Shown here piece by piece: positions 779-8,625 of a stretch of DNA of 64,000 nucleotides. The notes beneath the pieces are model-generated. The model was given only the letters and a program-made list of their open reading frames with translations. It searched no databases and was not told where the DNA came from. Both the position numbers and the translations under genes were made by a program. Location: the IMG/VR virus record IMGVR_UViG_2162886007_000107, positions 62,001 to 126,000 of that record; one strand, given 5' to 3'. Positions within the stretch are counted from its first letter, which is position 1, and every line of letters starts with the position of its first letter.

Positions 779-866
779 GGAGAGATTCCCGAGTGGCCAA
801 AGGGATCAGACTGTAAATCTGACGTGCGATCGCACTTCGTAGGTTCGAATCCTTCTCTCTCCACCA
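779..866 (+). tRNA. tRNA-Tyr(GTA)
   Basis: Acceptor GGAGAGA/TCTCTCC, anticodon arm TCAGA-ctGTAaa-TCTGA, long variable arm, TTCGAAT T-loop, encoded CCA. Confidence 0.95.
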
Positions 867-870
867 TGTT

Positions 871-1010
871 TATTCATAAGCCAAGTATCCAACAAGCGTA
901 AGCCTGGATGCAGGGAACCACAAAGCCAACGCGCTGCCAGTGATTGGTTAGGCAAGCAGAAAGTAACATTACAGCCGATGGTACGGTGAAATCTACTTGA
1001 CTTATGAATA
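871..1010 (+). ncRNA. candidate structured RNA module D between tRNA-Tyr and tRNA-Asp
   Basis: Long closing helix TATTCATAAG-C-CAAGTA(871-887)/TACTTG-A-CTTATGAATA(994-1010). Confidence 0.35.
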
Positions 1011-1018
1011 GCTTTATT

Positions 1019-1095
1019 GCGGCCATAGTTCAGCTGGTTAGAATACCCGCCTGTCACGCGGGTGGTCAGGGGTTCGAGTCCCCTTGGTCGCGCCA
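1019..1095 (+). tRNA. tRNA-Asp(GTC)
   Basis: Cloverleaf; CCCGC-ctGTCac-GCGGG anticodon arm; GGTTCGAGTCC; CCA end. Confidence 0.96.
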
Positions 1096-1511
1096 AACGT
1101 GTAGCTCTTGGCCCTGTGGGTCTCCTTGGTTGGTGTGGTGTTGTTACGCCAAGAGCTACACCCTATATTCGACGCCCCGCTACCCCGCGCCCTCGCCCGA
1201 AGAAAACACTTCCTGATTGTGGTGAGTCAGGTTCTGAGCATTTAATGCAGTGTAGTAAGAGTCTATATCGCCACGCATATTCCTTCTTCAGGTTTCATCT
1301 AGGTTTCCTGGAGAGAATCTTTGCCATTGTCCCCTGGTCCGGGCTGACGTTAACCGTGTCTATGGCAGAGTAAAGTTGTCCTGGCAAATAAGCCGGATAG
1401 AGCAAACGGTAGTTTCGTATTAAAAGTTGAAAGCAGCCTGGGATGCAGTTTGAGGTGGGTCCCCTATCGACAAGGCTAGGTTTAAAGCACTTACACTGAT
1501 CCGATTTATTA

Positions 1512-1587
1512 GGCCTAGTAGCTCAACTGGCAGAGCATCGGTCTCCAAAACCGAAGGTTCCAGGTTCGACTCCTGGCTACGCCGCCA
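1512..1587 (+). tRNA. tRNA-Trp(CCA)
   Basis: TCGGT-ctCCAaa-ACCGA anticodon arm; canonical D and T arms; CCA; one C:C mismatch in the acceptor stem. Confidence 0.92.
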
Positions 1588-1731
1588 AATTCCCTTACCA
1601 GATCCATTGATCAAGGACAACCTGGTAAGGTAAGAAAACACGTAGGAGCGTGCGACGGTCTACCTCCCTTGACTTAGGTCATGAGCAACGTGCGGTATAA
1701 GTCCGAAGACACGTCAAGATTTTTGTTACAT

Positions 1732-1807
1732 TCCGTGTTAGCTCAGTTGGTAGAGCAAACGACTGTTAATCGTTTGGTCCCTGGTTCGAGTCCAGGACAC
1801 GGAGCCA
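1732..1807 (+). tRNA. tRNA-Asn(GTT)
   Basis: AACGA-ctGTTaa-TCGTT anticodon arm; canonical D and T arms; CCA. Confidence 0.95.
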
Positions 1808-2077
1808 ATTCTTTAAACCTGTGCGTAATCACCCGAGATGCACCGCCCTCACAGGTTTTCATAGCTACATTCAAAATTGTCAGTCCGATCGTTGAGGTGG
1901 TCTAAACTGATAAGGCAACGCATCGTATCCGAAGGCATGTTAACTCTAGGGACCTTACCCCTACGTTAACCGCAGCCAAACCCGCCTGAGCGTTAGAAGG
2001 CAATAGAAATAAGTGTAAGTCCTCTGATGGCCATTCCGGGTTAAGGCTTGGTTGCATCAGAGGCATCCCCTTTTTGT

Positions 2078-2167
2078 GAGGACTGTAGCTCAATGGTTAG
2101 AGCAATGGGACGAATGGCCTCGCCATACTCCTTGGTCGCCGGTTCAATTCCGGTCAGTCCTCCGCCA
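2078..2167 (+). ncRNA. tRNA-like RNA with an elongated, non-canonical anticodon arm
   Basis: 8-bp acceptor GAGGACTG/CAGTCCTC, D arm TAGCTCAATGGTTAGAGCA, T arm GCCGG-TTCAATT-CCGGT; a ~29-nt irregular arm replaces the anticodon stem-loop. Confidence 0.7.
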
Positions 2168-2172
2168 GATGT

Positions 2173-2248
2173 GGGAACTGTAGTTCAATGGCAGAACGGT
2201 AGCCGACCAGGTTTCCAGTCGGTGGTTCGATTCCACCCAGTTCCCCCA
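2173..2248 (+). ncRNA. tRNA-like RNA (G-1:C73, degenerate anticodon arm)
   Basis: GGGAACTG/CAGTTCCC followed by CCA, D arm TAGTTCAATGGCAGAAC, T arm GGTGG-TTCGATT-CCACC; anticodon loop CGACCAG lacks U33. Confidence 0.7.
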
Positions 2249-2492
2249 CCCCACATGGTCTAGCGGCCGTGTTGTAGCGCACACCCCATTGTGCGTTATG
2301 AAACCGTAGCTTGATAAAGACAGGTTTAGCTGGCCTATCTAGTCGCTATGGAGTTTTGCCTTAACTTCGACGCTGCCTCGCCCTGGTAGTAAGGTTATGG
2401 AGGTCCTTGCTAACTCAACCCTGAAAAAGAATGTTCCTCTTCACAGGGTTGGACGACACCGTAAGGTTAGTCACCGAAAACCTCCCTCCACA

Positions 2493-2558
2493 CCCAATCC
2501 CCGCTTCTCCTCGTCACTGACCTGGAGCCGGGGATTGGGAGGTGGGGTTTATTTTTTT
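2493..2558 (+). terminator. intrinsic terminator closing the RNA region
   Basis: CCCAATCCCCG...CGGGGATTGGG stem followed by TTTATTTTTTT. Confidence 0.6.
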
Positions 2559-2596
2559 GCATTTCCACTGAATTGCAAATGTATAGGGGTAAGCCG

Positions 2597-2614
2597 TTTT
2601 CAGGACTATATTAC
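2597..2614 (+). promoter_or_regulatory. phiKZ-type early (vRNAP) promoter, TATATTAC
   Basis: TTTTCAGGACTATATTAC upstream of phuZ matches the phiKZ early consensus TATATTAC. Confidence 0.65.
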
Positions 2615-2681
2615 TCCCATGAGTGAATGAAACAAATATATTCGCTTACATTTTCTAAAGACCTGCAATAGAGAGTACGAC

Positions 2682-3677
2682 ATGTCTAACAAAGCTGAAC
2701 TGAACTTCATCCTCTGCGGTGGTGCAGGTATCAACATCGGTAAGCTGCTCCGTACTTCCAAACTCAATGACCGAGTAGCGGAAGCTTCTTACCTTGCACT
2801 GGACGCAAGCGGTAACAATCCAATCCCGAAAGAACTGAACATCCCGCTGGAGCGTGTAGCTGTAAGTGGTGATGCCTCTACCTTGGCCAATGGCTCTGGT
2901 AAAGTCCGTGCTACTAACTACGAAGCAGCTCAACCGTTCGTTAACGATGCGCTGACCAAACACACTCCTGGTACCTTCAACGTCGTCGTCTTCTCTGGCT
3001 CCGGTGGTTCGGGTTCCATTCTGGGCACCCTGGTAATCCGCTGGCTGAAGCAGAACGGCTACAAGTTCATCGCGATCATCATCAACGATCACACGTCGAC
3101 GATCGAAATGGAAAACGCCGTCAAGACCATGACCGGTCTGGCAGTACAAACTCAGCCGAACTTCCTCAATGCCGCAATCCCGCACATCGAGTTCAAGAAC
3201 ACCCCGGACAAAACTCGTGGCGAGATCGACCGTGCGGTCGTGAACCGTATCACCACTCTGTCCCTGTTCGCCACCGGCAAGAACGAAGAACAAGACCTTC
3301 AAGACGTTCTGAACGTTCTGGACTACTCCAACGCCTACAAAGTTCCGGCCGCTCTCAGCCGTATCTCGTTCTTCGACAACCCGGACAATTACAAAGGCCC
3401 TGCACCAGTTGCGGTCGTCTCCCTGTTCTCCTCGTCGTCGGACATCAAGGCGTGCTTCGAAGGCACTCACATCCGTTCCACCGGTGTGTTCGCTCCAGGC
3501 ACTATCCTGCCTGAAGGTGTTACCCAGATGCACATGATCCTGGATCACGGCGAAGGCCACAAAAAGCTGGAATCCGAATCCGAAGATCTGGAAAAACGTA
3601 GCGTGACTACTCGTACCACCTACGTGGCGCAGAAAGATATGTCGAAAGGTGCTGACACCAACGGCATCCCGCTGTAA
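2682..3677 (+). CDS. phuZ: phage tubulin PhuZ
   Basis: CGGAGIN, NGSGK and SGSGGSGS tubulin/FtsZ motifs; PhuZ-like C-terminal tail; strong codon bias. Confidence 0.93.
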   Translation: MSNKAELNFILCGGAGINIGKLLRTSKLNDRVAEASYLALDASGNNPIPKELNIPLERVAVSGDASTLANGSGKVRATNYEAAQPFVNDALTKHTPGTFNVVVFSGSGGSGSILGTLVIRWLKQNGYKFIAIIINDHTSTIEMENAVKTMTGLAVQTQPNFLNAAIPHIEFKNTPDKTRGEIDRAVVNRITTLSLFATGKNEEQDLQDVLNVLDYSNAYKVPAALSRISFFDNPDNYKGPAPVAVVSLFSSSSDIKACFEGTHIRSTGVFAPGTILPEGVTQMHMILDHGEGHKKLESESEDLEKRSVTTRTTYVAQKDMSKGADTNGIPL

Positions 3678-4097: not shown

Positions 4098-4646
4098 GTG
4101 CTCGTATACAACATGGTTGCCAAGGCTAACCAATTGATGATAGGCAAACTGGACGAACCTACAATGGGTCGTATTGAAATTGCCAAGATCATCTTTGAAG
4201 CAGCCGTGGAAGTTATTAATTGCAAGCGCCCCTCAAGACGTGACGAACTAACCGACGAAATCGTTGAATTCGGTGAAACCGGTTACGGCATGGTTTTGCC
4301 AGATTGTGTGCTGGATAGTTACATCGAAGAGATCCACGACGATCTTAAGAAGGCACGCTGGGATCCACGCATCGTCATCAAGATTAAATACTTTAACATT
4401 GGTGATGCTTTATATACCGCCACTCTGGAGATGGATCTAGAAGCGACGGTAGAGAAGATGGGTTGGGACAGGGTACCTATTGCAGAGGACACAGACCATA
4501 TCTCTGATGTGGTTGAAGATAATCCGTCGATGGACACTATCAATGCGCTTAATCGATTCGATGCTTCTAGGCGTAAGTCCGAACCTAGAATTTCATCATA
4601 TCCCACTTCGGGATTTGTACGCGGAGTTCCGCGACGAGATCGCTAA
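4098..4646 (+). CDS. hypothetical protein
   Basis: GAGG RBS, GTG start, in operon. Confidence 0.75.
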   Translation: MLVYNMVAKANQLMIGKLDEPTMGRIEIAKIIFEAAVEVINCKRPSRRDELTDEIVEFGETGYGMVLPDCVLDSYIEEIHDDLKKARWDPRIVIKIKYFNIGDALYTATLEMDLEATVEKMGWDRVPIAEDTDHISDVVEDNPSMDTINALNRFDASRRKSEPRISSYPTSGFVRGVPRRDR

Positions 4647-5028
4647 CCACGTAGTTGGTAATATCCCAACTAAACGCTGGGAGGAAATGTTTCAAGGTTT
4701 CTTTGAGTCAATTGTCATCGATACCTTGCAGACAAGCTTTAATGCAGTGAATATGCAGGACAGCATATTTAACGGCAAGTTGTACCACAGGAATTTTTTG
4801 AAGGACGATATTCACGATTTCTTTTGTGACTATAGTTCGAAGATTGCAACACGAATACTTTTAGTAAGCGCAAATACAACCAACACACATCGTTGGGTGT
4901 ACAAGATTACGAATCCATTGAACATCATAGTGGGTTCTGATCCACGGGATACCATAACGGACCCTACGGAATTAGAGCCCTTGCCAATTGAACCTGAGGA
5001 GGATAACTGGTATGGCAATGAAAGTTAG
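4561..5028 (+). CDS. hypothetical protein
   Basis: ATG at 4561 (the track starts at TTG 4480); overlaps the previous gene by 86 nt. Confidence 0.65.
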   Translation: MLLGVSPNLEFHHIPLRDLYAEFRDEIANHVVGNIPTKRWEEMFQGFFESIVIDTLQTSFNAVNMQDSIFNGKLYHRNFLKDDIHDFFCDYSSKIATRILLVSANTTNTHRWVYKITNPLNIIVGSDPRDTITDPTELEPLPIEPEEDNWYGNES

Positions 5029-5332: not shown

Positions 5333-5628
5333 TGGGTTTCTTTACTCACGTTATCCAAGTACCTCCGCTGACGGATACCATGATGTTGGTGGGGGCTTAC
5401 AGAAGCCTCATGGACACGATTGGTATTGAGTGCAGTAAATTGGCTCAGTATCCAAGCAGCAGTGGTGTCACGCACCCTATAGCGAGTGCACAGCAAATAC
5501 TGGCGGATGACTTCTCTGATACTTACTCTATGCTCATGGTTTCATACATGTTCCATGGAAGTTTGTCAGTCTCCAACATGACGTTCATGTCTAACTGCTG
5601 TGTGTTTACGTTCACCCACCCGGATTAA
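5332..5628 (+). CDS. hypothetical protein
   Basis: TAATG stop/start coupling, GGAG RBS. Confidence 0.7.
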   Translation: MGFFTHVIQVPPLTDTMMLVGAYRSLMDTIGIECSKLAQYPSSSGVTHPIASAQQILADDFSDTYSMLMVSYMFHGSLSVSNMTFMSNCCVFTFTHPD

Positions 5629-5633
5629 TATCT

Positions 5634-5951
5634 ATGCGTTATGGAATGCTAGTACCGGTTAACTACGATCAACTAGCTGAGTTCCTTTTGCTTAAGGCAT
5701 CGGACATCCATGATCCCTTGGATCTCAGCTTTGAGAGTATCTATCGCTACCTCGATGAAACTGCAACTGCAATGCTGTGTGATCCAGAACACCGCACGGA
5801 TGAGATTGAAGATATCGAATTAACGGAACTCCTGCTCAAGGAACACTACTTCGGTTGTATTGAAGATGTAGTGGTTACCAAGATCCCAGGTATTGTCGTT
5901 CCGGTTGGTGACCATCTTTTGAAGCTTCCGCTAGTTTTAATCAAAATCTAA
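5634..5951 (+). CDS. hypothetical protein
   Basis: Contiguous operon ORF. Confidence 0.7.
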   Translation: MRYGMLVPVNYDQLAEFLLLKASDIHDPLDLSFESIYRYLDETATAMLCDPEHRTDEIEDIELTELLLKEHYFGCIEDVVVTKIPGIVVPVGDHLLKLPLVLIKI

Positions 5952-8608: not shown

Positions 8609-8625
8609 TTTTGGACCTATATTAC
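8609..8625 (+). promoter_or_regulatory. early promoter, TATATTAC
   Basis: TTTTGGACCTATATTAC upstream of 8685. Confidence 0.65.

What the first reader, a model, noticed from the sequence alone, without database searches (positions are those of the whole stretch)
2078..2248. Two tandem tRNA mimics: intact elbow and 8-bp acceptor, broken anticodon arms
Seen: both RNAs keep well-formed D arms, T arms and perfect 8-bp acceptor helices (G-1:C73, the tRNA-His-type geometry). The first has a ~29-nt elongated arm (inner ATGGC-ctc-GCCAT hairpin, no 7-nt U33 loop) and ends C-G-CCA. The second has a mismatched anticodon stem, loop CGACCAG without U33, and a correct CCA. Divergence confined to the anticodon arm in two adjacent genes does not look like random decay. 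Inference: non-decoding tRNA decoys, e.g. against host anticodon nucleases or tRNA-sensing defences, synthetase/EF-Tu titration, or amino-acid donors.
Basis: partly seen in the sequence, partly recalled or inferred. Interest (0 to 1): 0.7.

Follow-up and report, generated by a model that had tools for sequence, protein, structure and literature searches.

The report
Phage tRNA-His-like RNAs without anticodon loops
Two adjacent genes in a giant phage belong to a conserved, apparently undescribed family of tRNA-shaped RNAs that keep the tRNA-His-type end and the tRNA elbow but carry a rod-like hairpin in place of the anticodon loop, so they cannot read codons and must do something else.

Summary
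Window 2078-2162 and 2173-2245 fold as tRNA cloverleaves with 8-bp acceptor stems (G-1:C73). #1 has a 29-nt rod instead of an anticodon stem-loop. #2 has a 17-nt arm with a U:U mismatch and the loop CGACCAG.

The window is from a 236-kb phiKZ/EL-like jumbo phage (PhuZ tubulin, divergent PolB). These two genes end its only tRNA cluster: Tyr, Asp, Trp, Asn.

They are not decaying pseudogenes. Relatives with 52-83% PhuZ identity carry orthologues at the same place, in two types, A (like #1) and B (like #2).
- 13 of 17 body base pairs show compensatory changes.
- G-1:C73 is invariant in 16 of 16 members and occurs in 0 of 27 canonical tRNAs of the same clusters.
- All 12 long arms stay hairpins although their sequences differ.
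- Arms and bodies have partly separate histories.

The encoded CCA is often displaced or absent, while all 27 canonical neighbours have it. The unit sits directly upstream of a conserved, covarying ~300-nt noncoding RNA seen in a soil metatranscriptome.

Best reading: non-decoding, tRNA-His-derived mimics that act through their acceptor end and elbow. The partner is unknown. HisRS is the first candidate, and an anticodon-nuclease decoy is unlikely. Function was not tested.

The parts
2021..2063 (+). Conserved long hairpin (CCUCUGAUG...CAUCAGAGG) followed by a C/U-rich tract that runs into the 5' end of mimic #1. It may be a terminator or processing element that separates the canonical tRNAs from the mimic/ncRNA unit.
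   Evidence: Sequence, coordinates. The same hairpin stands in front of the last tRNA(-like) group in L009 and L011, and a variant stands there in L007. Function not tested.
2078..2162 (+). Mimic #1 (type A): G-1 to C73. Acceptor 2078-2085/2155-2162, D arm 2088-2103, rod 2105-2133 in place of the anticodon arm, variable GGUC 2134-2137, T arm 2138-2154.
   Evidence: Scores 80.3 bits with the family model R1. The L019 orthologue has an identical rod and two compensatory acceptor changes.
2163..2172 (+). 3' tail CGCCA of #1 (CCA displaced by 2 nt) plus the 5-nt spacer GAUGU, which ends in the U that precedes G-1 of #2.
   Evidence: the base before G-1 is U in 13 of 13 family members. The spacer after an upstream CCA is AAUGU or GAUGU.
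2173..2248 (+). Mimic #2 (type B, short-arm form): G-1 to C73 (2173-2245) plus CCA (2246-2248). Arm 2199-2215 has U28:U42 and the loop CGACCAG.
   Evidence: Scores 62.2 bits with R1. Its acceptor, D and T stems match long-arm type B genes in L007, L018 and L020. The same short-arm form follows tRNA-Asn in another phage (run X8), and a long-arm form does so in run X7.
2253..2486 (+). Conserved structured noncoding RNA directly 3' of the last mimic. Conserved blocks: 5' box ACAUGGUCUAGCGGCCGUGU, GCUGGCC, UAUCUUCGA, GGAGG paired with CCUCC, and a GUAA-capped hairpin.
   Evidence: Alignment A2 of 11 phages: 40 consensus pairs, 17 with compensatory changes. No Rfam match. In the soil metatranscriptome X14, the only contig on 1850-2700 covers 2264-2503.
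2491..2559 (+). Strong terminator-like hairpin plus U-tract that closes the mimic/ncRNA unit.
   Evidence: Sequence, coordinates. The stem covaries among relatives.
779..1807 (+). The four canonical tRNA genes of the cluster: Tyr 779-866, Asp 1019-1095, Trp 1512-1587, Asn 1732-1807. All encode CCA. Together with the two mimics they are the only tRNA-type genes in the 236-kb genome.

Best explanation
The two genes are the type A and type B members of a conserved family of phage-encoded, non-decoding, tRNA-His-derived small RNAs.

How they most likely work:
1. They are transcribed as the last part of the tRNA cluster, together with the downstream structured ncRNA.
2. They are released like tRNAs. 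The cut falls after the conserved U that precedes G-1, as in tRNA-His. In some relatives transcription may start directly at G-1.
3. They fold into a normal tRNA L-shape with an 8-bp acceptor stem.
4. A 10-13-bp-equivalent rod replaces the 7-nt anticodon loop, or in #2 a closed, U33-less loop does. So they cannot pair with codons or fit the decoding site, and they offer no anticodon loop to anticodon nucleases.
5. Their activity therefore lies in the tRNA top half: the G-1:C73 acceptor end and the D/T elbow. I infer that this half occupies or recruits a host protein that reads it. HisRS is the first candidate; RNase P and other readers of the acceptor end are alternatives.
6. The exchangeable rod acts as a lineage-specific second module.

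What is shown: the structure, purifying selection on the body, invariance of G-1:C73, hairpin maintenance with cassette-like turnover of the arm, and the fixed position in the tRNA-ncRNA unit.
What is inferred: processing, the partner and the benefit to the phage.

My confidence is about 0.9 that this is a selected, non-decoding tRNA-like RNA family, and about 0.35 that it works by engaging a factor that reads the tRNA-His-type acceptor end. The figure in the confidence field blends the two.
For: Architecture.

Family and position:
- The family is present in the window, L007, L011, L013, L015-L020, L029 and L077.
- It always lies between the last canonical tRNA and the conserved ncRNA upstream of PhuZ.
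- The custom model R1 scores family members at 62-91 bits and the clade's ordinary tRNAs at 47 bits or less.

Selection on the body:
- 96% of cells are paired, and 10 of 17 pairs show double changes (13 of 17 in the expanded set). None of 500 shuffles reaches this, and slid controls drop to 33-54% paired.
- G-1:C73 is the only acceptor pair that never varies. It occurs in 16 of 16 members not chosen for it (18 of 18 with L028 and L031) and in 0 of 27 canonical tRNAs of the same clusters.
- The best canonical matches of R1 in bacterial DNA are genuine tRNA-His genes.
- U precedes G-1 in 13 of 13 members.

The arms:
- All 12 long arms fold better than at least 95% of their shuffles, although their sequences differ.
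- Arm and body identities are mosaic. L018a and L020a are 100% identical in the body and 86% in the arm. win1 and L019a are 91% in the body and 100% in the arm.

Other support:
- No decoding features: no U33, no consistent purine 37, and triloops in several arms.
- A strain that is 2% diverged in PhuZ (51 differences in 2,672 bases) shows no difference across 1850-2700.
Against: - No direct evidence that the mimics accumulate as processed RNAs. The RNA runs are assembled contigs, and only the neighbouring ncRNA stands out in one of them.
- CCA is at 74-76 in only 4 of 13 mimics (27 of 27 in canonical neighbours), and it is absent within 3 nt of C73 in 4 members. This argues against obligatory aminoacylation.
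- Close relatives lack one or both mimics (L009, L012, the phage in run X8), so they are dispensable.
- In six relatives G-1 coincides with the G of a TATG motif. In phiKZ that G is the late-promoter start site (PMC4666361). Part of the G-1 constraint could therefore be promoter-related.
- The phage encodes no HisRS, CCA-adding enzyme or TROVE protein that would point to a partner.
- The HisRS complex prediction was not run by the tool, so it gives no evidence.
Confidence: 0.5

Rival explanations
1. Processing handles. The tRNA-shaped units serve mainly as punctuation that lets RNase P and the 3' tRNA-processing enzymes cut the downstream ~300-nt ncRNA (and each other) out of a polycistronic transcript. 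This is how mascRNA defines the end of MALAT1 and how tRNAs punctuate mitochondrial transcripts.
For: - In every relative the ncRNA's conserved 5' box starts 3-10 nt after a tRNA-shaped element of some kind: Asn in L009, Gln in L012, type A, B or C elsewhere.
- In the metatranscriptome X14 the only contig on this stretch covers the ncRNA alone and does not run into the mimic.
- An exact CCA is not required.
Against: - A canonical tRNA does the same job in L009 and L012, so punctuation does not explain why dedicated non-decoding units are kept. It also does not explain why there are often two in tandem, why G-1:C73 is invariant, or why specific rods persist across divergent bodies.
Confidence: 0.2
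2. Natural tRNA scaffold. The functional payload is the rod hairpin, for example an aptamer or decoy for a host or phage RNA-binding protein. The tRNA body serves only to give correct processing, a compact fold and nuclease resistance, as in engineered tRNA-scaffold RNAs.
For: - Arms behave as cassettes. Identical or near-identical rods sit on diverged bodies (win1 and L019a; L007a and L013a). Different rods sit on identical bodies (L018a and L020a).
- Rod length is held within 27-34 nt, and all 12 rods remain hairpins.
- The exact CCA position is relaxed.
Against: - No motif is shared among all rods.
- #2 and its twin in run X8 work with a short 17-nt arm.
- The invariant G-1:C73 is not needed for a mere scaffold.
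- No complementary target beyond chance was found in the genome: 9-12 nt at most.
Confidence: 0.15
3. Decoys for anticodon nucleases or other tRNA-cleaving defences. The mimic binds the nuclease but cannot be cut.
For: - The clade's clusters recurrently carry Asn, Asp and Tyr, three of the four GUN-anticodon tRNAs, but never a decoding tRNA-His, whose place the His-like mimics take. By my own knowledge that set is what colicin E5-type nucleases attack.
- Presence and absence vary among close relatives, as is typical of counter-defence genes.
- Phage tRNAs are known to counter such defences (PMC10264068, PMC11464382, PMC11555353; listed, titles and abstracts only).
Against: - By established knowledge, anticodon nucleases recognise the anticodon stem-loop, which these RNAs lack. 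They would be poor competitors.
- A defence that reads the acceptor end or elbow would fit, but that case falls under the best explanation.
- No experimental or contextual link to any defence system was found.
Confidence: 0.08
4. Recently inactivated tRNA pseudogenes, or true tRNAs with a short intron in the anticodon loop that is spliced out.
For: - ARAGORN and Rfam call them tRNAs.
- Other viral contigs do carry tRNAs with 13-14-nt inserts right after position 37. Examples are a GUU anticodon followed by an insert, including in giant-virus contigs.
Against: - Against pseudogenes: orthologues across 52-83% PhuZ identity keep every body helix through compensatory changes.
- Against introns: no member has U33, a consistent anticodon or a purine 37. 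Removing any 12 nt from #1 does not give a canonical loop.
- The phage has no splicing endonuclease, RtcB or Rnl2-type ligase. The Rnl1 search was uninformative because its control rang nowhere.
- The inserts are far too short for self-splicing introns.
Confidence: 0.04
5. A YrlA-type Y RNA, that is, the tRNA-like partner of a Ro60/Rsr protein.
For: - Weak Rfam YrlA hit spanning the T arm of #1 to the D arm of #2 (25.9 bits).
- YrlA also combines a tRNA-like elbow with a long helix in the anticodon-arm position (my own knowledge).
Against: - The score is far below the gathering score of 69, and the hit is an artefact of two tandem cloverleaves.
- The topology differs. YrlA has its ends in the long helix and a closed acceptor; these RNAs are the reverse.
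- There is no TROVE/Rsr gene in the phage.
Confidence: 0.03

Closest known systems
Bacterial tRNA-His
   Same: 8-bp acceptor stem with a genome-encoded G-1 paired to C73. U precedes G-1, which fits the shifted RNase P cut. Canonical D and T arms. True tRNA-His genes are the best canonical matches of the family model.
   Different: No GUG anticodon and no 7-nt loop. The arm is a 27-34-nt rod, or in #2 a closed loop lacking U33. CCA is often displaced or missing.
Stable 'species 1 and 2' RNAs in the phage T4 tRNA gene cluster (my own knowledge, not tested here)
   Same: Small, stable, non-decoding RNAs encoded inside a phage tRNA cluster, co-processed with the tRNAs, function still unknown.
   Different: No sequence or structural homology was tested or is apparent. 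The T4 RNAs are not cloverleaves with a G-1:C73 end.
Bacillus cereus tRNA-Other, a pseudo-tRNA (PMC3399842; listed, title and abstract only)
   Same: A tRNA-shaped RNA that does not work in translation but has a cellular role.
   Different: It is chromosomal and bacterial, with an ordinary-length anticodon arm, a different identity and a different context.
YrlA Y RNA (Rfam RF02553) and the tRNA-like domain of tmRNA
   Same: A tRNA elbow and acceptor combined with a long helix where the anticodon arm would be.
   Different: YrlA is circularly permuted and needs Rsr, which is absent here. tmRNA carries alanine identity (G3:U70) and a tag reading frame, and ARAGORN finds no tmRNA.
mascRNA with MALAT1, and the tRNA punctuation model
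   Same: A tRNA-like unit next to a longer ncRNA, where tRNA-processing enzymes define the neighbour's end.
   Different: Those are eukaryotic and the unit lies 3' of the long RNA. The Rfam score is 23.7 bits against a gathering score of 42.5. Here the unit lies 5' of the ncRNA.
Phage tRNAs with anticodon-loop mutations that evade host nucleases (PMC10264068, PMC11464382; listed, titles and abstracts only)
   Same: Phage-encoded tRNA genes altered in the anticodon arm, plausibly under pressure from host defences.
   Different: Those tRNAs still decode. These cannot.
Histidine-accepting tRNA-like structures at the 3' ends of tobamovirus RNAs, and engineered tRNA scaffolds (my own knowledge)
   Same: Viral mimicry of the tRNA-His acceptor end. 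Separately, use of a tRNA body to stabilise an RNA inserted in place of the anticodon arm.
   Different: The plant-virus structures are pseudoknotted 3' ends of genomic RNA. The scaffolds are artificial.

Membership tests
Canonical decoding tRNA (Rfam RF00005) | Cloverleaf with acceptor, D and T arms, scoring above the gathering score | tested here: met
   48.9 and 47.5 bits against a gathering score of 29. Helices are supported by covariation.
Canonical decoding tRNA (Rfam RF00005) | 5-bp anticodon stem with a 7-nt loop, U33 and purine 37 | tested here: not met
   #1 has a 29-nt rod with the triloop CUC. #2 has G33, and C32:G38 can pair. No family member has U33.
Canonical decoding tRNA (Rfam RF00005) | CCA at 74-76, which all canonical tRNAs of this phage clade encode | tested here: inconclusive
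   Present in #2 and displaced by 2 nt in #1. It is at 74-76 in 4 of 13 mimics and 27 of 27 canonical tRNAs. Post-transcriptional addition is not excluded.
tRNA-His | G-1:C73 extra base pair | tested here: met
   Invariant in 16 of 16 members not chosen for it, and in 0 of 27 canonical neighbours.
tRNA-His | GUG anticodon | tested here: not met
   No GUG at an anticodon position in any member.
tRNA-His | Charged by HisRS | not testable with these tools
An in vitro charging assay is needed.
YrlA / bacterial Y RNA (RF02553) | Model score above the gathering score; adjacent or co-encoded Rsr (TROVE) protein | tested here: not met
   25.9 bits against a gathering score of 69, and the hit spans two genes. 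No TROVE match in the 236-kb genome, and the control rang.
tmRNA | tRNA-Ala-like end (G3:U70) and a tag reading frame | tested here: not met
   ARAGORN finds no tmRNA. Pair 3:70 is G:C, A:U or (in two members) G:U, with no tag frame.
Intron-containing tRNA (protein-spliced) | Insert at 37/38 next to a recognisable anticodon loop; a splicing endonuclease and ligase are available | tested here: not met
   No anticodon-loop remnant. No tRNA_int_endo, RtcB or RNA_ligase match in the phage. The Rnl1 search was uninformative.
mascRNA-type tRNA-like processing signal (RF01684) | Model score above the gathering score | tested here: not met
   23.7 bits against a gathering score of 42.5. The functional analogy (punctuation) remains possible.

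The most novel reading that the evidence does not exclude
This clade of nucleus-forming jumbo phages uses a tRNA-His-type body (8-bp acceptor, normal elbow) as a natural scaffold. The scaffold presents exchangeable hairpin cassettes, or an uncleavable and ribosome-excluded His-type acceptor end, to host factors. That would make these RNAs a new class of RNA-based host-manipulation or counter-defence effectors. They would be produced as one unit with a second, undescribed ~300-nt structured RNA.
Probability: 0.2. Interest if true: 0.85.

Novelty: new variant of a known kind. Interest (0 to 1): 0.66.

Why it matters
Why phages carry tRNA genes is an old question that has reopened recently. The current answers, codon supply and replacement of tRNAs cut by host defences, both assume decoding.

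Here is a conserved phage family that keeps everything about a tRNA except the ability to decode. It also keeps the one feature that marks tRNA-His. That points to a role for the tRNA top half outside translation, and it is directly testable:
- map the RNA ends;
- test HisRS charging and binding;
- pull down partners;
- delete the genes in a cultured relative.

There is a practical point too. Annotation pipelines label these genes tRNA-Ile(AAU), tRNA-Gly(ACC), tRNA-Ser or 'undetermined', which distorts counts of phage tRNA repertoires.

The adjacent ncRNA is conserved, covaries and is expressed. It is a second candidate new RNA family in chimalliviruses.

Tried and rejected
- **blastn of the pair against 50,697 phage records:** no homologue, only a 35-nt T-arm match.
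- **More distant relatives:** phage EL and two IMG/VR relatives (PhuZ 42-46%) have no tRNA genes in the 6 kb upstream of PhuZ. R1 run over EL and the two whole IMG/VR records found no family member.
- **The genome search 'relatives':** not available for a virus record.
- **Antisense or guide idea:** the longest complementarity of any rod to its own genome or locus is 9-12 nt, which is chance level. My first script found only the gene itself.
- **Phage-encoded partners:** no TROVE, CCA-adding enzyme, HisRS, tRNA splicing endonuclease, RtcB or Rnl2-type ligase. The Rnl1 search had no working control.
- **HisRS-mimic complex prediction:** the tool does not fold protein-RNA jobs, so there is no evidence either way.
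- **Pattern scan of bacterial and archaeal genomes:** 110 loci matched; R1 was run on the 80 listed (L080-L159).
  - The R1 hits I inspected were genuine tRNA-His, Val and other tRNAs near the pattern match, tRNAs broken by runs of N (probably scaffold gaps), and a few unrelated long-arm tRNA-likes.
  - None was a clear family member.
- **RNA evidence:** only assembled contigs are available, so RNA ends and abundance of the mimics could not be read. The plant RNA run covers genes and mimics evenly and may contain DNA.
- **Simple promoter/terminator scan:** uninformative for this phage type.
- **Literature searches for a described equivalent:** nothing found.
Full report
**1. What the window is**

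The window is bases 62001-126000 of a single 236,430-bp contig with 48% G+C. IMG/VR holds it as a complete virus record. A soil metagenome contig with an identical PhuZ and the same six tRNA calls also exists (L004).

Just downstream of the finding lie a tubulin-family gene (2682-3677, PhuZ type), an SH3 polymerase-associated protein and a divergent family B DNA polymerase. The polymerase is 65% identical to that of Pseudomonas phage EL, and the next matches are other phiKZ-like jumbo phages. So this is an EL-related, phiKZ-like (chimallivirus) jumbo phage. By my own knowledge such phages form a nucleus-like compartment and transcribe their genes with their own RNA polymerases.

Its only tRNA-type genes are six on the + strand: Tyr, Asp, Trp, Asn and the two genes of the finding.

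**2. The observation**

#1 (2078-2162):
- 8-bp acceptor including G-1:C73.
- Normal D arm with GG in the loop, and normal T arm with loop UUCAAUU.
- A 29-nt arm (2105-2133) that folds into a rod with a CUC triloop, one bulged C and one A:A mismatch.
- After C73 comes CGCCA.

#2 (2173-2245, plus CCA to 2248):
- The same kind of acceptor and elbow.
- A normal-length arm with U28:U42 and the loop CGACCAG. G33 replaces the universal U33, and C32:G38 can pair and shrink the loop to 5 nt.

Rfam's tRNA model scores them at 48.9 and 47.5 bits and skips the anticodon arm in both. The four canonical neighbours score 53-70 bits. ARAGORN's names, Ile(AAU) and Gly(ACC), are forced. By my own knowledge, anticodons with A34 are not used for these amino acids in bacteria.

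**3. Relatives decide the pseudogene question**

DNA searches found no homologue among deposited phages. EL and two IMG/VR relatives (PhuZ 42-46% identical) have no tRNA genes in the 6 kb upstream of PhuZ.

A protein search with PhuZ gave a graded series of uncultured relatives at 52-83% identity. I fetched twelve of their loci. All have a 1.5-2.5-kb gene-free stretch upstream of PhuZ that holds a variable set of canonical tRNAs. Downstream of the last of these, most have low-scoring tRNA hits of 83-90 nt.

Parsing them shows one architecture throughout:
- G at -1, a 7-bp acceptor, U8 A9.
- A 4-bp D stem and a GG-containing D loop.
- A 27-34-nt hairpin where the anticodon arm should be.
- A GGUC-like variable loop, a 5-bp T stem and the T loop UUCRANY.
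- C73.

Two types recur, often in tandem in the order A then B:
- Type A has the D stem GCUC/GAGC (GCGC in L015). Members: #1 and genes in L015, L016, L017, L018, L019, L020, later also L029 and L077.
- Type B has the D stem GUUC/GAAC or AUUC/GAAU. Members: #2 and genes in L007, L011, L013, L018, L020 and L029.

A model built from 13 members (R1) scores the family at 62-91 bits and the ordinary tRNAs of the same loci at 47 bits or less.

**4. Selection on the body**

On the 13-sequence alignment, 96% of cells in the acceptor, D and T helices are paired. Ten of 17 pairs show changes on both sides. None of 500 shuffles reaches these values, and sliding the partners drops pairing to 32-54%.

With 18 sequences, 13 of 17 pairs show double changes. 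Seven of the eight acceptor pairs covary. The single exception is -1:73, which is G:C in every sequence. Two of the 18 (L028 and L031) were picked because they have that pair, so the unbiased count is 16 of 16.

None of the 27 canonical tRNAs in these clusters has G at -1 with C73. The base before G-1 is U in 13 of 13 members. By my own knowledge that is the favoured base 5' of an RNase P cut, so this fits a tRNA-His-type cut one position upstream of the usual one.

When R1 is run on unrelated bacterial DNA, its best canonical hits are genuine tRNA-His(GUG) genes. The family is therefore most simply a descendant of a phage tRNA-His gene. The clade's clusters recurrently carry Asn, Asp and Tyr, three of the four GUN-anticodon tRNAs, but never a decoding tRNA-His.

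**5. The arm**

All 12 long arms fold better than at least 95% of their own shuffles, with 8-11 bp each. Their lengths stay within 27-34 nt, but no sequence motif is common to all.

No member has U33, a constant anticodon or a purine 37. Several end in triloops. So these are neither anticodon arms nor anticodon arms with an insert.

Arm and body have partly separate histories:
- L018a and L020a: bodies identical, arms 86% identical.
- L011a and L013a: bodies 95%, arms 64%.
- #1 and L019a: identical arms on bodies that differ by two compensatory acceptor changes.
- L007a and L013a: the same inner hairpin on bodies with different acceptor and D stems.

Laying contigs of other runs on the window shows three things:
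- One close relative (X8) has tRNA-Asn followed directly by the short-arm form of #2, and no #1.
- Another close relative (X7) has a long-arm type B at that place.
- A strain that is 2% diverged in PhuZ has no difference at all across 1850-2700.

So #2's short arm is a variant of a normally long-armed gene. It is shared by at least two phages, and its 'ACC anticodon' is incidental.

**6. The 3' end**

All 27 canonical tRNAs encode CCA at 74-76. Among 13 mimics:
- 4 have CCA at 74-76. These are #2, L016b, L018a and L020a.
- 5 have it displaced by 1-3 nt, including #1, where the tail reads C73-CG-CCA.
- 4 have none nearby.

The phage has no CCA-adding enzyme. A host enzyme could still add CCA. 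Even so, the relaxed constraint argues against obligatory aminoacylation.

**7. Context**

The mimics always sit between the last canonical tRNA and a conserved noncoding RNA.

- The RNA's 5' box, ACAUGGUCUAGCGGCCGUGU, starts 3-10 nt after the preceding tRNA-shaped unit.
- It spans window 2253-2486 and then a terminator hairpin with a U tract (2491-2559).
- It has 40 consensus pairs, 17 with compensatory changes. These include a long-range GGCCG:CUGGC helix, a GGAGG:CCUCC helix and a GUAA-capped hairpin.
- It has no Rfam match.
- In a soil metatranscriptome, the only contig on 1850-2700 covers 2264-2503, which is this RNA alone.

In L009 and L012 a canonical tRNA precedes the ncRNA and no mimic is present. 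So the mimics are accessory.

In six relatives the leader ends in TTATG with the G being G-1. In phiKZ the late-promoter consensus is TATG and its G is the start site (PMC4666361). In those phages the mimic/ncRNA unit may therefore start exactly at G-1. The window's two leaders read TGTG.

**8. Mechanism**

Shown:
- A conserved L-shape-competent body with a tRNA-His-type end.
- No decoding loop.
- A maintained but exchangeable rod.
- A fixed place in a tRNA-ncRNA unit.

Inferred: release by the tRNA-processing enzymes, and action through the top half of the molecule.

The rod would project well beyond the normal anticodon, by roughly 6-8 bp on my own estimate. That excludes the molecule from the decoding site. 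It also removes the substrate that anticodon nucleases need, so I rank the anticodon-nuclease decoy low.

By established knowledge, readers of the acceptor end and elbow include RNase P, the 3' processing enzymes, the CCA-adding enzyme, the T-loop modification enzymes, EF-Tu (if the RNA is charged) and, for G-1:C73 specifically, HisRS. The base-specific invariance of G-1:C73 makes a factor that reads the His-type end the best single candidate. I put this at about 0.35.

The main rivals are:
- Punctuation for the ncRNA, about 0.2.
- A natural tRNA scaffold that presents the rod, about 0.15.
- Pseudogene or intron-bearing tRNA, about 0.04.
- Y RNA, about 0.03.

The phage encodes none of the obvious partners or splicing enzymes. 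The rods have no complementary target above chance. The HisRS complex prediction was not executed.

**9. Comparison and novelty**

The family works like other non-decoding tRNA mimics: tRNA-Other, the tRNA-like part of YrlA, the tRNA-like domain of tmRNA, mascRNA and plant-virus His-accepting ends. It fails the defining tests of each of them (see the membership table).

Literature searches found no description of phage tRNA-like RNAs with a G-1:C73 end and a rod in place of the anticodon arm. I rate it a new variant of a known kind.

A pattern scan of IMG/VR also shows that tRNA-shaped genes with over-long anticodon arms are not rare in viral contigs. Some are clearly tRNAs with a 13-14-nt insert after position 37, including in giant-virus contigs. 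Others are rods with ordinary ends. The His-type end is limited to this clade plus two unrelated contigs (L028, L031).

**10. Verdict**

Interest 0.66.

Noticed in passing
window 2253-2559 (also L007 ~5566-5875, L009 ~5571-5885, L011 ~4544-4850, L012-L019): A conserved ~300-nt structured noncoding RNA lies directly after the last mimic and ends in a strong terminator. It has 40 consensus pairs, 17 of them with compensatory changes, and no Rfam match. In a soil metatranscriptome (X14) the only contig on 1850-2700 covers 2264-2503, which is this RNA. It looks like an undescribed RNA family of EL-related jumbo phages. A weak resemblance in phage EL itself (L003) was seen in an alignment but not tested.
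   Followed up: partly
L007 ~5485-5563, L017 5423-5495, L014 5289-5361; 91-nt insert in run X8 between window 2246 and 2253: A third tRNA-like type ('C'). It has a long acceptor-like stem (the GGAGACUU type in L014 and L017), a triloop hairpin in place of the D arm, a 5-bp stem with the 7-nt loop UUAGCUA, and a T-arm-like hairpin (GGUUCGAGACC). It lies between type A or B and the ncRNA. ARAGORN does not call it, and R1 scores it at only 22-23 bits in L014 and L017.
   Followed up: partly
L007 4381-4443 and 4507-5292: A tRNA-Trp gene is truncated in its T arm and is followed by an ORF with weak HNH_3 and NUMOD4 hits. This looks like a homing-endonuclease insertion in the tRNA cluster of a close relative.
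   Followed up: no
L016 5212-5285: A tRNA with the acceptor stem and G73 of the clade's tRNA-Asn, but with the anticodon loop UAUUGAC (A33 instead of U33, UUG at 34-36). ARAGORN calls it 'tRNA-???'. This is another anticodon-arm-altered tRNA in the same cluster, immediately upstream of a type A mimic.
   Followed up: no
L018 5323, L020 173, L077, L029, L011 4451, L013 5287 (leaders); window 2073-2078 and 2168-2173: In six relatives the leader ends in TTATG with the G being G-1. This matches the phiKZ late-promoter consensus TATG, whose G is the start site (PMC4666361). The upstream ~20 nt (GUAAACGAGUCAAGAWUUAUG) are shared between a type A gene (L018) and a type B gene (L011). The window's own leaders read TGTG.
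   Followed up: partly
window 2607-2614 and 8618-8625: TATATTAC motif about 70 nt upstream of the PhuZ start. A CTATATTAC-like block is conserved there in all relatives, and a second copy lies after the polymerase gene. By my recollection this resembles the phiKZ early-promoter motif; I did not check that.
   Followed up: no
window 779-1807: The canonical tRNAs are Tyr, Asp, Asn and Trp. Across relatives the recurrent set is Asn, Asp and Tyr, three of the four GUN-anticodon (queuosine-family) tRNAs. A decoding tRNA-His is never present. The spacers between the tRNAs are long (144-416 nt) and were not examined for further RNAs.
   Followed up: partly
IMG/VR loci L022-L079 (for example L038, L042, L047, L030; L058, L062, L076): 58 viral contigs carry class-I-type tRNA bodies with over-long anticodon arms. 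Some show an intact CU-GUU-A loop start followed by a 13-14-nt insert, which is intron-like; two of those contigs are giant-virus MAGs. Others are plain rods with ordinary -1 and 73 bases. Two contigs outside the clade (L028, L031) combine a long arm with G-1:C73.
   Followed up: partly
window 2048-2263 (+), 1902-2093 (-), 2397-2630 (+): Mechanical ORFs of 63-77 aa overlap the mimics, the ncRNA and the terminator. They run across conserved RNA helices and are almost certainly not genes.
   Followed up: no
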